In this document: positions 3,985 through 62,462 of the stretch, piece by piece | How positions within the stretch are numbered: the first letter of the stretch is position 1 | Layout: each line of letters begins with the position of its first letter | IMG/VR virus record: IMGVR_UViG_3300027668_000008 | Span: 124,001 to 188,000 of that record | DNA: 64,000 nt | Reading direction: 5' to 3' (one strand) | The notes under the pieces: model-generated | What the model was told of the DNA's origin: nothing | Database searches by the model: none | The model's input: only the letters and a program-made list of their open reading frames with translations | Translations under genes and position numbers: made by a program

Positions 3985-4061
3985 TGGCGCACCCTACAGG
4001 ACTCGAACCTATTACCTCTGGTTCCGCAAACCAACGCTCTATCCAGATGAGCTAAGGGTGC
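3985..4061 (-). tRNA. tRNA-Arg, anticodon GCG
   Basis: GCACCCT/AGGGTGC acceptor stem, A20, anticodon arm TTGGT-TTGCGGA-ACCAG, TTCGAGT T-loop, encoded CCA. Confidence 0.9.
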
Positions 4062-4072
4062 CTTTATAGTTT

Positions 4073-4148
4073 TGGTGGAGGATACAGGGATCGAACCTGC
4101 TACCTCCTGAATGCAAATCAGGCGCTCTCCCAGATGAGCTAATCCCCC
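4073..4148 (-). tRNA. tRNA-Ala, anticodon TGC
   Basis: GGGGGAT/ATCCTCC stem with G3:U70, arm CCTGA-TTTGCAT-TCAGG, encoded CCA. Confidence 0.95.
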
Positions 4149-4181
4149 AAAACTAAATTCTTTTTGTAACATACTAATACT

Positions 4182-4210
4182 ATAATATAACATTCAACGA
4201 GTGTTGTCAA
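4182..4210 (-). promoter_or_regulatory. sigma70-type promoter for tRNA-Ala/tRNA-Arg
   Basis: TTGACA-N17-TATTAT. Confidence 0.75.
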
Positions 4211-4222
4211 GAGCCATAAAAG

Positions 4223-4312
4223 TGGCGGAGAGACTGGGATTTGAACCCAGGAAAGAGTTGCCCCTTTGCCGGTTTAGTAAACCGGTGCTTTCAACCGCTC
4301 AGCCATCTCTCC
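4223..4312 (-). tRNA. tRNA-Ser (long variable arm), anticodon ACT
   Basis: GGAGAGA/TCTCTCC stem, G73, long variable arm AAAG-GGGCAACT-CTTT, arm CCGGT-TTACTAA-ACCGG, encoded CCA. Confidence 0.88.
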
Positions 4313-4321
4313 GGAGTATTT

Positions 4322-4525
4322 TTATTTAGGTACGATTTCAAAACACTTAACTAGTGCCTGCATATCAGTCAAACCAGCCGCTTTACATTCTGCGTATAAT
4401 TTCTTTCTAGCGCCGACTACTTCGTCTGGTGCTACTTTTATACTTTGCATCCTATTTGATTTTGCATTAGGATTCATGCCACGATATCTGGTATTATGTT
4501 TATTATTTTTGTTACGATCATTCAC
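4322..4525 (-). CDS. Small basic hypothetical protein between tRNAs
   Basis: 67-aa ORF, GTG start. Confidence 0.55.
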   Translation of the reverse strand: MNDRNKNNKHNTRYRGMNPNAKSNRMQSIKVAPDEVVGARKKLYAECKAAGLTDMQALVKCFEIVPK

Positions 4526-4541
4526 GCAATTTATTTTTCTG

Positions 4542-4617
4542 TGGTGCCGCTTCCCGGATTCGAACTGGGCACCTACTGATTACAAATCAGTTGCTCTACC
4601 AAATGAGCTAAAGCGGC
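4542..4617 (-). tRNA. tRNA-Thr, anticodon TGT
   Basis: GCCGCTT/AAGCGGC stem, arm ACTGA-TTTGTAA-TCAGT, encoded CCA. Confidence 0.95.
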
Positions 4618-16304: not shown

Positions 16305-16523
16305 TTAGTTATGTTCTCCACGATAAATTTTACCGCCTTTAGAAACATAAGGAATGTCTCCACGACAAATACCTATGTCATGTAATTCTGCATCTGATAA
16401 CCTAGAAAGAGTTCTTAAAGTTGTTGCGTTTGCTCGGCGCTTTTTGTAAGCATCTTGTATTCCTAAAACATACTCTTTAATTGTGTTGCAAATTGCACAA
16501 ACATTTAGTGTTATAGTAGACAT
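16305..16523 (-). CDS. DUF1127 (YjiS-like) small protein
   Basis: RRANATTLRTLSRLSDAELHDIGICRGDI. Confidence 0.88.
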   Translation of the reverse strand: MSTITLNVCAICNTIKEYVLGIQDAYKKRRANATTLRTLSRLSDAELHDIGICRGDIPYVSKGGKIYRGEHN

Positions 16524-26479: not shown

Positions 26480-26745
26480 ATGCAACGATTTCTGTTGCTA
26501 GGTACGTTGCCAACCCCCACGTGCTTATTTTACTAAGCCGCTAATGCCATTTCTGGCTGATAATTGTTATTTGCAATTATAAAGTTTCTTCGCGATAACG
26601 GTGCTTAGATCCCGAGAACTCCACTAACTCTAGTAATTACCTGTCGATCCTATTCATCCCCATATGAAAAATCTGTTGTATTTGGTGGAGATGCCGGGAT
26701 TCGCACCCGGGTCCAGTTTAACTTTTGAATTGCTTCAACGTTCTA
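26480..26745 (-). ncRNA. ssrA: Circularly permuted two-piece tmRNA (alphaproteobacterial type), tag ANNNYQPEMALAA
   Basis: Acceptor piece ends with T-arm and CATCTCCACCA at 26683; 21-nt spacer; coding piece starts GGGGATGAATAGGATCGAC at 26661 (G3:U70); tag ORF 26574-26533; CCTAGCAACAGAA near the 3' end. Confidence 0.93.
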
Positions 26746-26749
26746 AGTA

Positions 26750-26780
26750 TATTTATACACTATTCACTTGACTTTGTCAA
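26750..26780 (-). promoter_or_regulatory. Hybrid sigma70 / late promoter of tmRNA
   Basis: TTGACA-N17-TATAAA, where the -10 is part of TATAAATA. Confidence 0.8.
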
Positions 26781-26865
26781 CCAAATAATATACAAATAAA
26801 GTACTAATATTAAAAATAAAAGATAAGTATTCTATAAAAGCAAAATACATCAACTAAAGGTAATT

Positions 26866-35528: not shown

Positions 35529-36529
35529 TATGAACGTTCTTGTCGATCTAAATCGTCAACGCCTTCTTGTCCAGAAGCGTCTGCGTCTAAGTCTATATCT
35601 AATGTATCATCGACTGCATTTACTTCTGCGTCTGCATCAGCATCTGCTACAGGCTCTTCAAGTTCAAGGTCGTCAGCAGTAGTTAAGTCTGTTCCAGACT
35701 CGTCTGCATTTCCAGTTAAAATACGTGATGCATTATCCATGTCGCCTCTTGCAGTTGTTAACGCATCATATAGTGCATCCAACGAACCTTTAGCGGCATT
35801 TATAAATGCTTCTGCTTTTTCATTACCCATTTCATCACGGATTTGATCCGTTAATGGAAGTAAATCTTCTGCCTGCATATCACTCACATCTTCTAACATA
35901 GATTGAATTCTGTCAACTAGGTCTTTTGATGCTAGTACTAATTCAGCACTCTCAACATCACCTTCGTTAATTTGTTTAGACTCTGCAATGCCTAATTGTT
36001 TTTTAGCACGTTTGTCTACCATTTGTAAGAAACGCACATTTGCTAAATTACTAGACATAATTTCATCAATCATATCTATAATTGGCATAAGTCCTGTCAT
36101 TAAAGTCGGGGGAACTGTTTGACCTTTTTTGTACATTTCTAAAGCACGTTTGGCTTTCATATAATTTTGTGGGCCTACTAGTAGTCTTAAAGCATTTGCT
36201 TTTCTACTTTGTGCCGCTGGAGATTCTTGTTCTGGTTCTACTTTACCATCATTGGGCTCAATCTCACCTTTTTCTTTTGTAGTTGGACCTTCGTTAACAC
36301 CTAAGTTATTTTCAATTTGCCATGCTTCAACTGTTTCTAAAACAACTTTAGACATCATATACTTCTTGCCCTCAGTTTCTTCTGCCATTTCTCTTTTAGC
36401 AGTTTTTATCATTTGGTTGGCGATGTCTTCGTTCATTTTGCTTAAATCAAAACCGAATCCAAAACGAGTAGACAGTAATTTGTTTAACTTACTACTTCTC
36501 GATACTTTGTTTAAATCATTTAATTCCAT
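35528..36529 (-). CDS. Putative prohead core/scaffold-like protein with acidic tail
   Basis: Multiple [LIV]-x-E sites (VNEG, IAES, INEG); acidic C-terminus; TAAATA upstream. Confidence 0.55.
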   Translation of the reverse strand: MELNDLNKVSRSSKLNKLLSTRFGFGFDLSKMNEDIANQMIKTAKREMAEETEGKKYMMSKVVLETVEAWQIENNLGVNEGPTTKEKGEIEPNDGKVEPEQESPAAQSRKANALRLLVGPQNYMKAKRALEMYKKGQTVPPTLMTGLMPIIDMIDEIMSSNLANVRFLQMVDKRAKKQLGIAESKQINEGDVESAELVLASKDLVDRIQSMLEDVSDMQAEDLLPLTDQIRDEMGNEKAEAFINAAKGSLDALYDALTTARGDMDNASRILTGNADESGTDLTTADDLELEEPVADADADAEVNAVDDTLDIDLDADASGQEGVDDLDRQERS

Positions 36530-36559
36530 GTGAGTTCCCTAATTCTATGTTATTACTAT

Positions 36560-37000
36560 TTAGTTGATTTTAATCTTTTTAATTGTTTCATCTAACTGTC
36601 CTCTAACGTAATTCTTATGGTATTCGCTCTCTTCATACCTAATATACATCAAATCTTTGCGAAATTCGTCATTTGCAGTACGATATCTTTGATGAAATAT
36701 CATCGAATCATTAGCAAACCTACTAAACTTCAAATCCTGTGCTTCAACTAGTTGTGCTTCTGTCTGTTGCCCTTGTAATGAAGCGACAGCCCATGCTAGA
36801 GCACTGTTTCGTAGTGTAAAGGAGTTAACTAACTCTCCGTTATCATATACTTGCCATACACCATTACGTTCTAAGCAATAGTATTTACCCACTTTAACAT
36901 GAGCACCATTTATTGATACAACGGGTAAGTTATCAGATTTTTCTTCTAAGAAGTTTTTAATCTTTGTTATACTTACTTTACTTTTTATTTTCTTTGACAT
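36560..37000 (-). CDS. Hypothetical protein
   Basis: Likely start ATG 37000 (ORF extends to 37039). Confidence 0.65.
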   Translation of the reverse strand: MSKKIKSKVSITKIKNFLEEKSDNLPVVSINGAHVKVGKYYCLERNGVWQVYDNGELVNSFTLRNSALAWAVASLQGQQTEAQLVEAQDLKFSRFANDSMIFHQRYRTANDEFRKDLMYIRYEESEYHKNYVRGQLDETIKKIKIN

Positions 37001-37184
37001 AGTAGAGATCACCATTTTTCTTTTTCCTATTGAGTACACTTTTATTCACTAACATAAATGCCAACTTTAGTTGACCTGGGCTTAACTCAGTCATTATAAT
37101 TGACTGCTTAAATTCTCCTAAAAAGTCTTCTTCTTCCTTTGTCAATGAAACTCTTGCTCCATCGGAAAACTTATAGTATGTCAT
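36978..37184 (-). CDS. Small hypothetical protein
   Basis: 68 aa, coupled to the upstream stop. Confidence 0.7.
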   Translation of the reverse strand: MTYYKFSDGARVSLTKEEEDFLGEFKQSIIMTELSPGQLKLAFMLVNKSVLNRKKKNGDLYYVKENKK

Positions 37185-38091
37185 TACTTGCCTTGTTGCG
37201 TCTTAATCCATGCTTTTGCAACAGGATTAGTATGCGGTGTTTCTGTGTATGCTTTCATTCTTCTATACATACTCAGTAATACACCCTTTAGGCTTTCATT
37301 ATTTGAATTGTCTACTACGAACATATTTCTACCAAAAAAGTTGTGGAATTTTCCAATGTTTGTTTGTACACTTTTCCACATTTTAGTAACTAGTTCGTTG
37401 GGTAATCTTCTATCTCTTTTAGCATTACGTTCTAATGCCGTATCTAAGTCAGTGTTAACAAACACCATTGCACAATCGTATCCGATTTTACGCAATTCTC
37501 CACTTAGATGTTCTATTTTGTCATAATCTTTACCGGTGCCATCTATAACTACGCCTAGGCGTCCATCTAAAAAAGATTGTTGTTTTATATCAGTTAAGGC
37601 TTTAGCACGTTGTCTTGTCGCTTGTCCGTCAGTACTAGCAAGTGCATCTGGATCTGTTAAATCAATATTGCTCTTTTTTGCTAGATACTCATAAGCATCG
37701 TCGGTGTTTATTATTTTATATCCTAAAGACACAAATGCAACATTCTTAGCAATAAAGCTCTTACCACTACCAGGACCACCTGCTAGGAATACTGCTTTAA
37801 AAATTGCGGGATCGTTTACACCTTCTTCAAGGTCAGTCAGTCTTTTTTTTTGACCTCGGTAGCAATGGATACTGTTTGTCCGGGTTTAATTTTGGAGCCT
37901 TGTCCTTGGGGTTTAGCGGATTTTGGCTTAATGGTTGGAGCATTAGGATTTGAAGTATCTATATCCATTTTCTTTAGGTCAATTTTAGTCGTAACACCTG
38001 GCTTCTTTGGATCGATAATTTCAACATTATCGCCAGCAACCTTAGTTACTTTACCTTGCATAGGTTCTTCAAATAAATCACTAATTCTCAT
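37184..38091 (-). CDS. P-loop kinase (AAA_33/Pnk-like) fused to the 84-aa upstream ORF via a -1 frameshift at A9 (37843-37851)
   Basis: Walker A in AVFLAGGPGSGKSF lies upstream of the first canonical start (GTG 37732); no ATG/GTG/TTG in frame between the in-frame TAA and Walker A; VVIDGTG and ERNAKR lid downstream. Confidence 0.7.
37837..38091 (-). CDS. 84-aa unshifted product (MRISDLFEE...)
   Basis: ORF ends AAA AAA AAA GAC TGA. Confidence 0.75.
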   Translation of the reverse strand: MRISDLFEEPMQGKVTKVAGDNVEIIDPKKPGVTTKIDLKKMDIDTSNPNAPTIKPKSAKPQGQGSKIKPGQTVSIATEVKKKD

Positions 38092-38092
38092 T

Positions 38093-38410
38093 TTAACTCC
38101 GTTTATTCAATGCTTGAACACGTTTACTTGCTGGGTTGATACGTTTAGTACGTTTTGATTTCAACTTCATTCTGGATCCAAGTTTTGCTTTAGTCATTTT
38201 TAGTTTAATACGTTTTCTTATATCAGGTGCTTTAAAACACGCACCAGGACTACTTACTATTTTACCTTTTAATCTACCAATTGAGCATCTGTACTTTCGT
38301 ACAACTTTGTTACCCGAACGGCCCCAAGCCATTTTGGTTTCATCTAAAGAAGTAGGATGTACTTCTTCGATAGGTGTATTTTCGTCGCTGAATAGTTCTA
38401 ATATAAGCAT
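38093..38410 (-). CDS. Small basic putative internal head protein
   Basis: MLILELF, LDE site, basic C-terminus; TAAATA upstream. Confidence 0.65.
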   Translation of the reverse strand: MLILELFSDENTPIEEVHPTSLDETKMAWGRSGNKVVRKYRCSIGRLKGKIVSSPGACFKAPDIRKRIKLKMTKAKLGSRMKLKSKRTKRINPASKRVQALNKRS

Positions 38411-38459
38411 AACACTACTATTTAGTTAAGTTTAATCGGTTTTAATTTTTTGTGAATTA

Positions 38460-38717
38460 CTATATGAATAAGTTGTAGGATAGTATGCCTACTGCACTGA
38501 TTAAAGAACCAATGATAGTCATACCCCACATGATAAGTTGAGATTGACGTTTTTCTCTATCTTTGACAACAGTGTCTCGGATTTCCCCAAGTACAGTTTC
38601 AATGCCGATAACTCGGCCCTCTAAATTGTCTAATTTTTCTTCCAATCGTGAATACCTCGCCGCACATAATTCTACATGGGCCTCTAGGCTTTCTTTCTCA
38701 ATTTCTCTTGTACTCAT
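38460..38717 (-). CDS. Coiled coil plus C-terminal TM protein (XhlA/holin-like architecture)
   Basis: SLEAHVELCAARYSRLEEKL coiled coil, then one TM. Confidence 0.6.
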   Translation of the reverse strand: MSTREIEKESLEAHVELCAARYSRLEEKLDNLEGRVIGIETVLGEIRDTVVKDREKRQSQLIMWGMTIIGSLISAVGILSYNLFI

Positions 38718-38737
38718 TCTCTTTTAGTTCCTGTTAC

Positions 38738-38840
38738 GCCTACCTGGGGCGGGTTGATAATTTCGGAGCCTTAATGAATGCCTTTGATTTGCCTATAAAT
38801 TGTTGCCTGTATGCCTAAGTTTGTTGCCTTAATTTTGCCT
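38738..38840 (-). repeat. Leader with eight AGGC (six AGGCA) motifs
   Basis: GCCT on the plus strand at 38738, 38768, 38780, 38791, 38805, 38813, 38826, 38837; TATAAATA at 38875-38882. Confidence 0.8.
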
Positions 38841-38926
38841 ATGTAACAAACGTTTATTACGTTTCTTACTAATGTATTTATAAAAGTCAAACAGTAGTAA
38901 AACACAAATATAATGTATAGGGTGTT

Positions 38927-39679
38927 TTACGCCTTTTTAATCTTATATTTCTTATGTACGTTTTGAATGTTCTTATCTCGGATTGCTTTGTATCCTATAA
39001 CTGCACCAACTGCCACACCTGCAATAGTTTTTGCGAATGTGTTACCAGTGTACGGACTTTTAGCATTTTGTGAAACTATACCAGTAACACTTTTGTTATA
39101 CGGTCCTGCTAAATCACTGCCTCTGGCATAATGATTAAGCATAAACCCTAAACGTGTTGCTCCTGCTTTTTGTTCATTTGGTAAAGCACGAGGCCAGTCT
39201 GAAATGATTCGTCTCATTGCAGTTAGTTTTGGATCTCTAATTTGTAGTGAACGTTCAACGGCAAGCATAGTACGTCTGTCTAATTGTGTATCTACTACAC
39301 CATTTTGTACGTTCTTTAAATATCTTTTAATTTGTGCAGTCGGAATACTGTATCCGCCTTTACGTTCCAATCCTGCAATTAAGTTATGCAAGTCTGTTGC
39401 ACCGGTTCTTACTCCGTCGAAGCCGTTGTATGACATAGTTTTCCTAGCATATGTACTTGCTTGTCCAGGATCAGTATAACGCATTGCTTGTACACCCATT
39501 AAGTGTGCATACACGTTCTTTGCAATATCTTCTTTATTTGATGTAGCGAATTGTGTTGGGTTTCTAAACAATCTTGCTTCAACTAGTTCATCGTTCATAA
39601 ATCCAAACATCTTTTGTTTAGGTTCAATTGTATGACCACCGTCCATTGCCGCCCATTCACTTGCAGTATACTTGTCCAT
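38927..39679 (-). CDS. Conserved phage hypothetical, putative virion protein
   Basis: LVE site near the N-terminus; C-terminal hydrophobic GVAVGAVIGY. Confidence 0.6.
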   Translation of the reverse strand: MDKYTASEWAAMDGGHTIEPKQKMFGFMNDELVEARLFRNPTQFATSNKEDIAKNVYAHLMGVQAMRYTDPGQASTYARKTMSYNGFDGVRTGATDLHNLIAGLERKGGYSIPTAQIKRYLKNVQNGVVDTQLDRRTMLAVERSLQIRDPKLTAMRRIISDWPRALPNEQKAGATRLGFMLNHYARGSDLAGPYNKSVTGIVSQNAKSPYTGNTFAKTIAGVAVGAVIGYKAIRDKNIQNVHKKYKIKKA

Positions 39680-39683
39680 TAAC

Positions 39684-40940
39684 TTATTTGCTCCAAGTTT
39701 TAGTTGCTGAGAAATTCAATGCATTGAATTCCATTCTATCATTTAGTTTAACTGCTCCACCGTCTATACCAAATGCTACAAATCCTTCATGGTTTGTAAC
39801 TCTGTATCCATTTTCAGTTTTTACAAATGTTCCAATTTTATCTACATTACTTAATTTACTAATTAATAATAGTTTAGCACTAATTATACGACGATACACT
39901 GCTAGTGTCAAGAGCAACGTATTACTATTGTCTGCTAAAAATTTCTTTTGTTGTTCAATTTTTTCAAAACGTTTTTGTGCCGCTGGACTTTCAGCGCCGC
40001 CTTTTAATTTTTCAACTTCTTTATTCATCTTATCATTATAATAATTCATAAAGTCTTGTAGGAACTTTGTCGGTTCACCGACTTGTTCCCCTGCTCTTAC
40101 ATTATTATTAATAAAAGGTTTAATAAACTTTGCAAATTCAGCCTGTAGTACTTGATCCATTTTAGGACCTACTTTTTTAAGTGTAGTACGCCCTGTTGCA
40201 ATAGTACCGTCTATAGCCTTTTCTTCGCTAGGTGTTAGTGTTGCAATACCGGATACATCTTTATAATTTGCGTCATCATACCATACATCTGCTGTAGGTT
40301 GTAAACCTCTAACACTGTAACCAAAATTTGCAGTCATTTCTGGTAGTGTAGCACCTGTATATTCTGTATGAAATACTATTCCGATTTTTGCTTTAGCGAC
40401 ACGTTTGCCAATAGCACTATCCACAGGAACTGCGTATGTAATAGTGTTAGGGGTAAACGTATAACAGTTGTCATCACCAACGTCTTCTGTTTTAACATCA
40501 CCTGGGCCAAAAAGGAAGTCGCCTTGTACAACTGATCCTATGCCTAATTTAGGTAATAGTTTAAACGCCATTAATAATTTTGCTTCTAGTGAAGGTTGCT
40601 CGGAATACCATTCTTTAATTTGTGCTACTGATTTAGCAACTTTAGGTGTCTTTGCATTAAACACTGATTTAGTGCCTACAAAGAATTTACTATCTTCTGG
40701 ATCTATTCCGCAAATAATTGCCGGGGCACCATCCCACTTAACAGTAACTTTACCTTCTGGTTGTCCGCCTTCTAATAAACCTTTAACTGCATCTAGATAA
40801 TTAAATGCTCTTTGGGCACCTGCGTAACCTTCATTAAAGATTAAGTCTTCAATATGTTCTAAGTGTGTGTTTTTACCTTCTGCTTCGTTAAGAATATTCC
40901 AGTAATGTGTTTTAGGTTCAAAAATTTCTTTTATAATCAT
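39684..40940 (-). CDS. ATP-dependent ligase-superfamily nucleotidyltransferase (RNA-ligase-like)
   Basis: KWDG (motif I), VGTKS (Ia), VQGDFLF (III), HEGFV (IV), AVKL (V). Confidence 0.6.
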   Translation of the reverse strand: MIIKEIFEPKTHYWNILNEAEGKNTHLEHIEDLIFNEGYAGAQRAFNYLDAVKGLLEGGQPEGKVTVKWDGAPAIICGIDPEDSKFFVGTKSVFNAKTPKVAKSVAQIKEWYSEQPSLEAKLLMAFKLLPKLGIGSVVQGDFLFGPGDVKTEDVGDDNCYTFTPNTITYAVPVDSAIGKRVAKAKIGIVFHTEYTGATLPEMTANFGYSVRGLQPTADVWYDDANYKDVSGIATLTPSEEKAIDGTIATGRTTLKKVGPKMDQVLQAEFAKFIKPFINNNVRAGEQVGEPTKFLQDFMNYYNDKMNKEVEKLKGGAESPAAQKRFEKIEQQKKFLADNSNTLLLTLAVYRRIISAKLLLISKLSNVDKIGTFVKTENGYRVTNHEGFVAFGIDGGAVKLNDRMEFNALNFSATKTWSK

Positions 40941-40941
40941 G

Positions 40942-41205
40942 TTATGCCGCTCGCTTACTTCTGGCTAAGATAGCTCTTACTTCGTCGTCTAAGTCTAGTG
41001 ATTTAATAACCATTGCTAGTGCTTCTACATCAACAGTTGCTTGTGTTACTTCTGGTGCTTGTGCTGTAGGCTCTACTGTAGGCTCTACTGTAGGCTTTGC
41101 TTTAGGTATTGCGTTTGCTTTTTGCTGGCGCTTTTTTGCTTGTTGCTTTTTACGTTGTTTACGACTTTTCTTTTCAGTTAAATCGTTTAACTCATTAAGT
41201 TTCAT
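40942..41205 (-). CDS. Small putative internal head protein
   Basis: MKLNELNDLTEK, basic stretch, PTVE repeats. Confidence 0.6.
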   Translation of the reverse strand: MKLNELNDLTEKKSRKQRKKQQAKKRQQKANAIPKAKPTVEPTVEPTAQAPEVTQATVDVEALAMVIKSLDLDDEVRAILARSKRAA

Positions 41206-42074: not shown

Positions 42075-42857
42075 ATGAACTATGATTCACACCATGCAAT
42101 GCTTTCTGCCTGTGCATACACGGATCTAAACCCATCTATTGAAGCAACTTTTAGTAAAATAGGGTATAAAACCATCCATTTTTTGAATACCGATGGGGCT
42201 CAAGCATATTTGTTGAGCAATGATGACCTTATTACGATTGCTTTTAGAGGTACTGAACCTAGTCAACCTAGCGATCTTATTGCTGATGCCAAAAGTTGGA
42301 AAAGTAAGAGTAAAGTTGCAGGTAAAGTACATGATGGATTTTATGATGAAATTGAAAAGATTTGGGATGAAATTGAAGAATTTGCAAATAACAACCCAAA
42401 AAAACAAATGACTATTACCGGTCACAGTTTAGGTGCCGCGATGGCAACACTCTGTGCCGCAAGGTTACAAGATAAGTTTGAGGATTTAGCATTATATACA
42501 TATGGTTCGCCACGTGTTGGTAATAAAGAATTCATAAACAGTTGTAAATTTAAACACTATCGTTGGGTTAATAACAATGATGCGGTAACTAGAGTTCCAC
42601 CTGCGTTTATTGGTTTTAGACATCACGGTCAAATGAAATATTTAAACCATTTTGGCAATATTAGAAACGGGTTAAGTACATGGCAACGTTTCAAAGACAG
42701 GATACGAGGAAGAATTTCTGCTTGGAAAAAGTGGCAATTATTTGATGGTGCATATGATCACAGTATTAGTGATTACCATAGAAAAATTAATAAAGCACAT
42801 TTATCTAAAACAAAAGATGGTAAAGTGATACTAGACCAATTTAAACCTAAAGACTAA
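42075..42857 (+). CDS. Lipase class 3
   Basis: IAFRGTE, VHDGFY, ITGHSLGAAMA, YGSPRVGN, NNDAVTRVPP, DHSISDY; AGGAG RBS; TAAATA at 42032. Confidence 0.92.
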   Translation: MNYDSHHAMLSACAYTDLNPSIEATFSKIGYKTIHFLNTDGAQAYLLSNDDLITIAFRGTEPSQPSDLIADAKSWKSKSKVAGKVHDGFYDEIEKIWDEIEEFANNNPKKQMTITGHSLGAAMATLCAARLQDKFEDLALYTYGSPRVGNKEFINSCKFKHYRWVNNNDAVTRVPPAFIGFRHHGQMKYLNHFGNIRNGLSTWQRFKDRIRGRISAWKKWQLFDGAYDHSISDYHRKINKAHLSKTKDGKVILDQFKPKD

Positions 42858-61059: not shown

Positions 61060-62085
61060 TTATGCTTGGCGTGAACGAATCATTGCTAAAATGTCTTCTG
61101 CATTTTGAGATGATCCACCAGCAGGTGCACTTGGCTCAGGTGTTGCAACAGGTGTTGCTACTGCCTCAGTTTGTACAGGTGCTGATATTGGTGCCGCCGG
61201 AGTTGGTGTTGGTTCTGCAAACGGTGCCGCAGTAGGTGTTGCCACTGGTGTTGCCACTGGTGTTGCTACTGGTGCCTTGTTAGCCGATTCCGGTAATTGT
61301 ACTCCTGAAGGACGGAAGTATTGCGAATACTTCTCGGAATCATAAGCCTTACCGTCAACACTATCTTCAAACATTTGTTTGATAATGCCTAGTTCTGCTT
61401 CGTTCGGCTTCTTTGGTAAGAAGTCGTTCAAATCATACAGACCATAAGTTTCGATTGCTTTTTGTTCTTCCTCAGTTAGAGCAGTTTCTTTCCTTGCCCA
61501 GTTAGAAGTAGAATAATCTGCATATCCGCCTTTACTAGTTTTTAGTACACGGAAGTCGATACCCTTTGTATAATCAGTAGGTAATTCTTCCATATCAGGA
61601 TCCATTAAACTTGCTTTAATAATATTAAAGAGTTGTGGTCCCATAATAAACCTACGAATTGGATTCTCAGGTGCATCTTCGTCTAATGCCGAATCGCGAA
61701 CAATACCTTGGAAAACATAAGATTTCTTTTTCCAATATTTACGACCCATGTCCTCTAAAGAACTGTCTTTAAACCACGGACGTACTTCCGCTAGTATTGG
61801 ACAAGAACCTACTGGTTCCCACATTTCCATACAAGGTACTTGTACAGTAATTGGCTTACTGTCCATTTGACCTTTAATGCCATTGAACGGTAAACGAATC
61901 ATCGCTCGCTCTGCCCAAAAGAATGTGTTTTGATTGTTGGAGTCTGGAAGGAATCGCAGTGTACTACTTGTTCCTTCTGCTATGTTCCAGTGTGGATAAA
62001 TTGCGTTGTCGCCGCCGCGGTTTCCGCCTTGTGAACGGGTATCCTGTGCTTGTAGTTTTGCACGGATTTCTGCTAATGATGCCAT
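61060..62085 (-). CDS. Single-stranded DNA-binding protein (gp32-like)
   Basis: LRFLPD, VPCMEMW..CPI, RKYWKKKSY; Pro/Ala linker; EDILAMIRSR tail. Confidence 0.92.
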   Translation of the reverse strand: MASLAEIRAKLQAQDTRSQGGNRGGDNAIYPHWNIAEGTSSTLRFLPDSNNQNTFFWAERAMIRLPFNGIKGQMDSKPITVQVPCMEMWEPVGSCPILAEVRPWFKDSSLEDMGRKYWKKKSYVFQGIVRDSALDEDAPENPIRRFIMGPQLFNIIKASLMDPDMEELPTDYTKGIDFRVLKTSKGGYADYSTSNWARKETALTEEEQKAIETYGLYDLNDFLPKKPNEAELGIIKQMFEDSVDGKAYDSEKYSQYFRPSGVQLPESANKAPVATPVATPVATPTAAPFAEPTPTPAAPISAPVQTEAVATPVATPEPSAPAGGSSQNAEDILAMIRSRQA

Positions 62086-62180
62086 GTTATGTGCCTCTCT
62101 GTTGCCTAGTTAATAGCCTAGTTATGTTGTTTTAATATTGCCTTGATAGCAATGTGTACACCTTCCTGATGTACTGCTAA
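62086..62180 (-). promoter_or_regulatory. ssb 5' leader: 5' hairpin plus four AGGC motifs
   Basis: TAGCAGTACA..TGTAC..TGCTA hairpin; GCCT at 62093, 62104, 62116, 62140; promoter TTGACT-N17-TATAAT at 62183-62211. Confidence 0.6.
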
Positions 62181-62239
62181 CAATTATACTTATCTTTAAA
62201 CCCAAAGTCAACCTTTATTTTCTGAATCTAATATAATTG

Positions 62240-62462
62240 TTACAACTAACTGTTTGGAAGGACTTGCTGTGAACTCACCTCCAACTTTCTAATAGCAGAT
62301 CACATCTAATATTGCAAGGTTTCGACGTGAAATTTACTAGAACCACCGCTTCTTAAACCAACCCACTTGGGCGCCTAAAAAGATTAAGTGTGCGTTACCC
62401 CTCTGCCGAAGAGTTATTCCGCCACAAACACAAAAGAATTATAAGCCCTTTTGTTTTAGTTG
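62240..62462 (-). ncRNA. Unassigned ~220-nt structured RNA
   Basis: Own promoter TTGACT-N17-TATATT (62471-62499); no ORF; GC-richer than its flanks; multiple helices. Confidence 0.65.

What the first reader, a model, noticed from the sequence alone, without database searches (positions are those of the whole stretch)
38738..38882. 160-nt leader studded with AGGC(A) repeats
Six AGGCA and two further AGGC motifs, with A/U-rich spacers of 8-14 nt period, lie between a TATAAATA box and a holin/XhlA-like gene. The layout recalls CsrB-type multi-site RNAs but with GGC rather than GGA. The same motif recurs four times in the ssb leader. Inference: binding sites or a sponge for an RNA-binding regulator that couples SSB status to a lysis-type gene, or ssDNA primase/origin signals.
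Basis: partly seen in the sequence, partly recalled or inferred. Interest (0 to 1): 0.6.

Follow-up and report, generated by a model that had tools for sequence, protein, structure and literature searches.

The report
Conserved AGGCA-repeat mRNA leader in phage
A marine jumbo phage carries a run of AGGCA repeats in the untranslated leader of a late membrane-protein gene; the same motif is conserved in the leader of its single-strand-DNA-binding protein gene across many related phages, so it is probably an undescribed multi-site RNA control element that links the two genes.

Summary
On the minus strand, six AGGCA and one AGGCU lie 8-14 nt apart (38767-38840). They sit between a TATAAATA box (38875-38882) and the ATG (38717) of an 85-aa tail-anchored membrane protein. 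It is the only cluster of four or more in the 306-kb phage genome; simulated genomes reach at most 3.

The repeats are conserved upstream of the homologous gene in about 15 distinct viral lineages, down to 43% protein identity. Spacer sequence, spacer length and copy number all vary. Spacers lack G, the motif is sense-strand only, and a 4-bp hairpin before the ribosome site shows compensatory changes. This points to an RNA element.

AGGCA is also the commonest 5-mer in 62 of 63 distinct SSB-gene leaders of this phage clade. In 515 kb of related loci, every cluster of three or more but one lies in one of these two leaders; the exception is inside a coding region.

Best reading: a single-stranded multi-site operator for a shared RNA-binding translational regulator, similar in layout to the phage T4 gene 32 operator (5' structure plus UUAAA repeats). 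The SSB itself is the leading candidate, but this is unproven. A CsrB-type sponge, XhlA membership and origin or primase signals are not supported. The element appears undescribed: no Rfam match and no hit in the one phrase search of the paper library.

The parts
38875..38882 (-). TATAAATA box (T4 late-promoter type), presumed promoter of the leader
   Evidence: Read directly from the sequence. The genome has 22 TATAAATA. Fifteen lie in the 6.6% that is intergenic, and 13 of those are within 200 nt upstream of a same-strand start. An (N)ATAAATA box precedes the array in most relatives. Late timing is inferred from T4 and was not shown.
38843..38869 (-). 5'-proximal stem-loop (11-nt arms, 10 of 11 paired, 5-nt loop) just after the predicted transcript start
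   Evidence: Inverted repeat I4 and the MFE fold. A different stem at the same place occurs in L017/L018, and the stem is absent in several lineages. It is therefore optional.
38767..38840 (-). Array of seven AGGC(A/U) units (six AGGCA and one AGGCU) with G-free A/U/C spacers, spaced 8-14 nt
   Evidence: Conserved with 2-6 exact AGGCA copies (plus AGGCU variants) in about 15 distinct lineages, with unalignable spacers. Mean predicted unpaired probability per unit is 0.42-0.80. A variant strain seen in RNA-library contigs shows no listed difference in the array.
38752..38766 (-). Conserved block UCCGAAAUUAUCAAC following the last unit
   Evidence: Nearly invariant columns in alignment A1. Function unknown.
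38737..38751 (-). 4-bp hairpin (CGCC ... GGCG, 7-nt loop with a conserved AG), 19 nt before the ATG
   Evidence: All 40 cells pair across 10 lineages, with three pair types at each of the four positions. None of 10,000 shuffles reached this, and slid controls paired 30%. The hairpin was picked by eye, and RNAalifold on the MAFFT alignment did not find it.
38728..38732 (-). Shine-Dalgarno-like AGGAA (GAGGAAG in relatives)
   Evidence: The genome's ribosome sites are canonical: GGAG, GAGG and AGGA are enriched 9-11 fold upstream of starts.
38460..38717 (-). 85-aa gene controlled by the leader. The protein has an invariant N-terminal IEKESLEAHVELCxxRY motif, a coiled coil and a C-terminal transmembrane anchor
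   Evidence: No Pfam or PHROG family above threshold. Found only in uncultured viral contigs; no match in cultured phages.
62092..62143 (-). Second copy of the element: three AGGCA and one AGGCU in the SSB gene leader
   Evidence: AGGCA is the commonest 5-mer in 63 distinct SSB leaders of relatives: 150 copies, 62 of 63 leaders with at least one, and none on the antisense strand.
62156..62211 (-). SSB promoter TTGACT-N17-TATAAT (62183-62211) and 5' hairpin GUACA...UGUAC (62156-62174)
   Evidence: Sequence and fold. A 5' hairpin with different stems recurs in relatives' SSB leaders (read by eye).
61060..62085 (-). SSB gene, a distant gp32 homologue and the leading candidate for the trans-acting factor
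   Evidence: phrog_1192 SSB at E = 7.5e-68. 25% identity to T4 gp32 over about 190 residues, E = 2e-4. The Pfam gp32 model does not match. Closest cultured relatives are PA5oct, Atu_ph07 and 121Q at 45-54% identity.

Best explanation
The AGGCA array is a cis-acting, single-stranded, multi-site protein-binding platform in the roughly 150-nt 5'UTR of an mRNA that starts at a TATAAATA-type promoter. The same kind of element sits in the SSB gene leader of this clade of marine jumbo phages. The proposed mechanism is that a trans-acting single-strand nucleic-acid-binding protein recognises AGGC(A/U) units spaced about 10-15 nt apart in G-free, unstructured RNA. It binds several units, spreads or reaches to the ribosome site, and sets the translation (and possibly the stability) of the downstream gene. 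The leading candidate is the phage's own gp32-like SSB, acting as T4 gp32 does on its own mRNA.

Because the 85-aa membrane-protein gene carries the same operator as the SSB gene, both would respond to the pool of free regulator. That is, both would respond to how much SSB is tied up on single-stranded DNA.

Shown here:
- the motif, its uniqueness in the genome and its conservation;
- its restriction to two leader types;
- sense-strand orientation, G-free spacers and a covarying hairpin.

Inferred:
- that a protein binds;
- that it is the SSB;
- the direction of the effect (repression);
- late timing.
For: 1. The array is conserved upstream of the homologous gene in about 15 distinct lineages (43-100% protein identity). 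Spacers differ in sequence and length, and exact AGGCA copy number ranges from 2 to 6.
2. AGGCA is the top 5-mer in 63 distinct SSB leaders, with 150 copies in 62 of 63 leaders and 0 antisense copies. It concentrates at -50 to -20, and in some leaders the last unit overlaps the ribosome site.
3. In 515 kb of fetched loci, every cluster of three or more AGGCA lies in one of the two leaders, except one hit inside a coding region. In the phage's own genome only these two leaders hold intergenic pairs.
4. RNA-level signs: the position between promoter box and SD; spacers with 2-11% G, against about 19% G on the coding strand as computed; low predicted pairing; and a 4-bp hairpin with compensatory changes.
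5. RNA-library contigs cover the leader.
6. Precedent: the T4 gene 32 operator is a 5' pseudoknot plus an unstructured tract with UUAAA/UAAA repeats, both needed for repression by gp32 (PMC535899; T4 sequence). Other phage lineages carry their own short repeats in SSB leaders: Atu_ph07 UAGCACAAU x3, HTVC008M AAUACA and Melnitz CAUACG.
7. The motif follows the phage lineage. It is absent from the leaders of PA5oct, 121Q, SCTP-2, HTVC008M, P-HM1 and Melnitz.
8. The preferred base before the motif in SSB leaders is U (AUAGGCA), which does not extend complementarity to the anti-SD.
Against: - No binding or expression experiment exists, and the factor is unidentified.
- T4 gp32 has little sequence specificity. 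A strictly conserved GGC core, and units spaced about 12 nt apart (not multiples of a 7-nt gp32 site), fit a sequence-specific binder better than a generic SSB.
- In the 85-aa leader the array ends about 50 nt before the ATG, so occlusion of the ribosome site needs spreading or another step.
- No co-variation of motif variants between the two leaders was seen.
- The phage also encodes a DUF1127 protein and a cold-shock-domain protein that could be the binder.
- Contigs from RNA libraries cannot prove transcription, transcript ends or strand.
- The hairpin was chosen by eye.
Confidence: 0.5

Rival explanations
1. Translation enhancer or ribosome standby platform. The unstructured, G-poor, CA-rich tract with AGG cores recruits 30S subunits or protein S1 and boosts translation, with no dedicated regulator.
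For: AGG is the core of the SD. The tract is predicted to be largely unpaired. SSB needs high expression. Unstructured A/C-rich leaders are known enhancers (general knowledge).
Against: - Only two of 71 long intergenic regions carry it.
- The conserved C-A after AGG, and the preferred U before it, do not match the anti-SD. AGGAG or GGAG variants never replace it in the arrays.
- AGGC is only 2.3-fold enriched at ribosome sites, against about 10-fold for GGAG.
Confidence: 0.2
2. mRNA stability or processing determinant. The repeats are recognition or protection sites for a ribonuclease (for example RNase E or a phage enzyme), setting the half-life of the two mRNAs.
For: Both leaders begin with a 5' hairpin, which is typical of stabilised mRNAs. 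T4 gene 32 mRNA is processed and unusually stable (PMC3014915, listed but not read in detail).
Against: No known nuclease site matches AGGCA (from memory only). Multi-copy arrays with a preferred spacing fit a binding platform better than cleavage sites.
Confidence: 0.12
3. DNA-level sites: iterons for a replication initiator, transcription-factor operators, or primase or packaging signals.
For: Direct repeats with a mean spacing of about 11-12 bp are near one helical turn. The location just downstream of promoters would also suit an operator.
Against: - Spacing is irregular (8-15 nt, with a second peak at 25-29).
- G depletion on one strand only, and 150 of 150 copies on the sense strand.
- An adjacent covarying RNA hairpin.
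- A 5-nt core is short for duplex recognition.
- No GC-skew inflection.
Confidence: 0.08
4. CsrB/RsmZ-type sponge RNA that titrates host CsrA.
For: Multi-site layout only.
Against: No GGA anywhere in the array. The motifs are not in hairpin loops. No Rfam hit even at E <= 1. No terminator after the array, and it runs on into a coding gene. The phage has no CsrA gene.
Confidence: 0.03

Closest known systems
Phage T4 gene 32 autogenous translational operator (5' pseudoknot plus unstructured tract with UUAAA/UAAA repeats, bound cooperatively by gp32)
   Same: - It lies in the 5'UTR of an SSB gene (for the second copy, at 62092-62143).
- It has a 5' structured element followed by an unstructured tract with a short repeated motif that reaches the ribosome site.
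- The motif is lineage-specific.
   Different: - The motif is AGGC(A/U), not UUAAA.
- Units are separated by about 10-15 nt rather than contiguous.
- The 5' element is a hairpin; a pseudoknot was not shown.
- The SSB is only about 25% identical to gp32.
- The copy under study controls a different gene, a membrane protein behind a TATAAATA box. To my knowledge this is not reported for T4 gp32 (from memory, not checked here).
CsrB/RsmY/RsmZ sponge RNAs
   Same: Several copies of a short G-containing motif in one RNA.
   Different: GGC rather than GGA, a single-stranded context rather than loops, a 5'UTR rather than a stand-alone sRNA, and no Rfam match.
TRAP and HutP type multi-site RNA targets (GAG/UAG triplets with short spacers, bound by ring oligomers)
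   Same: Repeated short motifs with tolerated variation in spacer length in a leader RNA, which suggests an oligomeric binder.
   Different: Different motif, longer spacers, and no homologous protein sought or found. The resemblance is from general knowledge only.
RB69 RegA targets (UAA repeats by SELEX) and T4 RegA
   Same: A phage translational repressor that recognises repeated short single-stranded motifs near start sites (from memory).
   Different: No RegA (PF01818) in this genome, and a different motif.

Membership tests
T4 gene 32-type SSB translational operator | Located in the 5'UTR of the SSB gene | tested here: not met
   The finding's array precedes an 85-aa membrane-protein gene. 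The sister array at 62092-62143 does meet this feature.
T4 gene 32-type SSB translational operator | 5' pseudoknot nucleation site | tested here: inconclusive
   A 5' stem-loop is present at 38843-38869, and at 62156-62174 in the SSB leader. No pseudoknot was tested, and the stem is absent in some lineages.
T4 gene 32-type SSB translational operator | Unstructured tract with a short repeated motif (UUAAA/UAAA in T4) | tested here: met
   The tract is unstructured and G-free, with 7 units. The motif itself differs (AGGCA), so this is analogy rather than sequence homology.
T4 gene 32-type SSB translational operator | Bound and repressed by the cognate SSB | not testable with these tools
   Needs EMSA or a reporter assay.
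CsrB/Rsm sponge RNA | Multiple GGA motifs, mostly in hairpin loops | tested here: not met
   No GGA in 38767-38840, and the units are mostly unpaired rather than in loops.
CsrB/Rsm sponge RNA | Match to an Rfam covariance model | tested here: not met
   No match at E <= 1 in 36000-41000.
XhlA (PF10779), for the downstream protein | Pfam model above the gathering score | tested here: not met
   No hit for the window protein at E <= 0.1. Two of 28 family members scored E = 0.003, below cut-off. The nearest named atlas cluster scored 0.92.
XhlA (PF10779), for the downstream protein | N-terminal coiled coil plus C-terminal transmembrane helix, about 70-90 aa | tested here: met
   Alignment A3. Topology alone is not diagnostic.
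gp32 family (for the SSB) | Pfam PF08804 match | tested here: not met
   No match in the genome. Distant homology is supported only by BLASTP at E = 2e-4 and phrog_224 at E = 2.6e-7.

The most novel reading that the evidence does not exclude
AGGC(A/U) repeats define a sequence-specific post-transcriptional regulon of a gp32-like SSB, or of another phage ssRNA-binding protein, in a large clade of uncultured marine jumbo phages. The SSB operator was copied in front of a late, tail-anchored membrane protein. Production of that protein (possibly a lysis-timing or membrane-remodelling factor) would then be gated by the amount of free SSB, that is, by the replication and ssDNA status of the infected cell.
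Probability: 0.25. Interest if true: 0.75.

Novelty: new variant of a known kind. Interest (0 to 1): 0.6.

Why it matters
Autogenous control of gp32 is a textbook case, but it is known only for T4-type phages and only for the SSB gene itself. Here a different, strictly conserved motif marks SSB leaders across a whole clade of uncultured marine jumbo phages. The same motif has also been placed in front of a second, unrelated gene.

If the SSB or another phage protein reads this motif, that would show two things. First, SSB-type operators can be sequence-specific. Second, they can be used to build small regulons that couple replication status to late functions.

The element is short and easy to mutate. 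It also gives a recognisable marker (hairpin, AGGCA array, ribosome site) for annotating these phages.

Tried and rejected
- **Rfam.** The finding's region (E <= 1), the SSB leader (E <= 5) and the whole window (gathering scores) gave nothing for either leader.
- **Tandem Repeats Finder.** It does not call the array because the spacers have diverged.
- **RNAalifold.** On the MAFFT alignment of the 3' leader it found no pairs, because the 3' arms are misaligned by loop-length differences. MAFFT on the hairpins alone also put them out of register. The pair counts were therefore made with my own script on hairpins chosen by eye.
- **Cultured phages.** tblastn of the 85-aa protein against cultured phages gave no match.
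- **Candidate regulators in the genome.** RegA, CsrA, Hfq, KH_1 and S1 domains gave no match above cut-off (Hfq best E 0.055, 11.8 bits; none for the others). DUF1127 and CSD proteins are present.
- **DUF1127 relatives.** Their viral contigs are at most 49% identical and do not overlap the array-bearing contigs, so no co-occurrence test was possible.
- **More distant homologues of the 85-aa protein.** At 50% identity or less (L034, L038-L042) they have short or unrelated upstream regions without an array. L044 has only AGGCU plus AGGCA.
- **Motif-variant co-variation between the two leaders.** Checked in the one contig holding both a variant-rich (AGGCU-rich) array and an SSB gene (L020/L135); none seen.
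- **A 44-aa GTG ORF over the array (38771-38905).** Rejected, because spacer indels in relatives are not multiples of three and it has no ribosome site.
- **Metatranscriptome contigs.** They cover the leader but cannot give transcript ends or strand.

Full report
**Context.** The window is bases 124001-188000 of a single 306,714-bp viral contig with 35% G+C. CheckV estimates it as 87% complete. Nearly all genes are on the minus strand. The SSB, UvsX-type recombinase and DnaB-type helicase place it among jumbo myoviruses. Its closest cultured relatives by SSB are PA5oct, Atu_ph07, Phosso and the 121Q/RaK2 group, at 45-54% identity. Only short, weak DNA similarity to Kyanoviridae was found. The same sequence occurs in many marine metagenomes.

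**Observation.** On the minus strand the 250-aa ORF ends at 38927. A TATAAATA box lies at 38875-38882, followed by an 11-bp stem-loop at 38843-38869. Then come six AGGCA and one AGGCU between 38840 and 38767, with start-to-start spacings of 11, 13, 8, 14, 11 and 12 nt. After the array come a conserved block (UCCGAAAUUAUCAAC), a 4-bp hairpin (38737-38751), AGGAA, and the ATG at 38717 of an 85-aa ORF.

The spacers contain no G. This is the only place in the genome with four or more same-strand AGGCA in 80 nt. In 150 Markov-1 genomes the maximum was 2-3.

**Conservation.** Homologues of the 85-aa protein were found in 27 IMG/VR loci. In every lineage from 100% down to 70% identity, and in one at 43%, the upstream region carries 2-6 exact AGGCA, often with AGGCU as the last units. 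Spacers differ in sequence and length and cannot be aligned. An (N)ATAAATA box precedes most arrays.

More distant homologues (50% identity or less) mostly lack the array. The element is therefore a conserved feature of a sub-clade, held by selection on the motif and not on the surrounding sequence. TRF does not even recognise it as a tandem repeat.

**Link to the SSB gene.** The SSB leader in the window has three AGGCA and one AGGCU, after a TTGACT-N17-TATAAT promoter and a 5' hairpin. In 63 distinct SSB leaders from relatives (59-84% protein identity):
- AGGCA is the most frequent 5-mer (150 copies);
- 62 of 63 leaders have at least one copy and 55 have two or more;
- no copy lies on the antisense strand.

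Start-to-start spacing peaks at 10-15 nt with a second peak at 25-29. Spacer G is 2-8%. The extended consensus is A-n-A-U-AGGCA-A-(A/C)-A.

In 515 kb of fetched loci, every cluster of three or more lies in one of the two leader types, except one chance cluster inside a coding region. In the phage's own genome the other 69 long intergenic regions have 0-1 copies. Two contigs that carry the 85-aa array also carry AGGCA in their SSB leader.

**RNA or DNA.** Several features point to RNA:
- the element lies between a promoter box and the ribosome site;
- it is strictly sense-oriented;
- its spacers avoid G, while the coding strand has about 19% G;
- it is predicted to be largely unpaired;
- it is followed by a hairpin whose four pairs all change by compensatory substitutions across lineages (CGCC/GGCG, CGUU/AACG, CGUC/GACG, CACC/GGUG, GACC/GGUC, GGUU/AACC, ACAC/GUGU). 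All 40 cells pair, and none of 10,000 shuffles reached this.

One caveat applies: the hairpin was picked by eye and RNAalifold missed it. RNA-library contigs from three runs cover the leader, and a variant strain shows no listed difference in the array. Contigs cannot show ends or strand, and DNA carry-over is possible.

Irregular spacing and a flat GC-skew trend argue against iterons or an origin.

**Mechanism.** The closest precedent is the T4 gene 32 operator. It has a 5' pseudoknot plus an unstructured tract with UUAAA/UAAA repeats. gp32 nucleates there and spreads over the ribosome site once ssDNA is saturated (PMC535899; T4 sequence).

The SSB here is a distant gp32 homologue. SSB leaders of other lineages carry their own short repeats. 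The AGGCA motif follows the phage lineage: it is absent from the PA5oct, 121Q, SCTP-2, HTVC008M, P-HM1 and Melnitz leaders.

I therefore read the array as a multi-site operator for a shared ssRNA-binding regulator, with the SSB as first candidate. This would place the 85-aa gene under the same control as the SSB gene.

Points against the SSB as the binder are the strict GGC core and the roughly 12-nt spacing, which suggest a sequence-specific binder. The phage also encodes a DUF1127 protein and a CSD protein. It has no RegA, CsrA, KH or S1 protein, and no Hfq above cut-off.

A plain translation enhancer is the main rival. It is weakened by the restriction to two leaders and by motif positions that do not match the anti-SD.

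**Downstream gene.** The 85-aa family is found only in uncultured viral contigs. It has an invariant N-terminal motif (I6, E7, L11, E12, A13, H14, V15, C18, R21), a coiled coil and a C-terminal membrane anchor. Its topology resembles XhlA, but Pfam membership is not met. 'Lysis-type' is therefore a guess.

**Novelty.** There is no Rfam family, and a phrase search of the paper library for an AGGCA or GGCA repeat element returned no paper on bacteria or phages. It is a new variant of the SSB-operator kind of element. Its new feature is that it also serves a second gene.

Noticed in passing
window 26481-26799 (-): A permuted (two-piece) alphaproteobacterial-type tmRNA gene scores 112.7 and 107 bits in Rfam. 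This hints that the host is an alphaproteobacterium.
   Followed up: no
window 3988-4617 (-): A cluster of four tRNA genes (Rfam tRNA, 59-67 bits).
   Followed up: no
window 62247-62452 (-): A sub-threshold match to the manA RNA motif (22.9 bits against a gathering score of 55.2, E = 0.0012). It lies in the 432-nt intergenic region just upstream of the SSB promoter.
   Followed up: no
window 39684-40940 (-) and 37184-37732 (-): A DUF6267 protein (E = 8e-108) carries a KWDG sequence that resembles ligase motif I (KxDG). Nearby is an AAA_33/Zeta-toxin/polynucleotide-kinase-like protein. Together they may form an RNA repair pair. DUF6267 stays syntenic with the 85-aa gene in distant relatives (L039, L040).
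   Followed up: partly
window 16305-16523 (-); genome 19808-19999 (+): The phage encodes a DUF1127 protein (49 bits) and a cold-shock-domain protein (83.5 bits). Both are possible RNA binders.
   Followed up: partly
L127 (Atu_ph07), L225 (HTVC008M), L226 (Melnitz), L129 (Phosso): the 100 nt before the SSB ATG: Other phage lineages have their own short direct repeats in the SSB leader: UAGCACAAU x3, AAUACA, CAUACG and GGCUC x2. Lineage-specific repeat operators may be general for phage SSB genes.
   Followed up: partly
window 62139-62160 (-) and L046, L047, L135: In the closest SSB leaders the first GGCA unit can pair with an upstream AUUGC (AUUGC-uauca-a-GGCAAU). This forms a second hairpin next to the 5' GUACA/UGUAC hairpin, and the pair might amount to a pseudoknot-like nucleation element.
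   Followed up: no
window 38897-38930 (-): A perfect 9-bp inverted repeat (GUAAAACAC ... GUGUUUUAC) overlaps the stop codon of the upstream 250-aa gene and is followed by a U-rich stretch. It may be a weak terminator that separates the two transcription units.
   Followed up: no
window 38706 (variant in RNA-library contigs X15, X16): A co-occurring strain has a 6-nt insertion (two extra codons) near the N-terminus of the 85-aa gene. This matches the 87-aa form that is common in relatives.
   Followed up: no
window 42075-42857 (+): A 260-aa ORF sits on the opposite strand amid minus-strand genes. It contains a GHSLG serine-hydrolase motif (read by eye, lipase-like; not scanned against families).
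   Followed up: no
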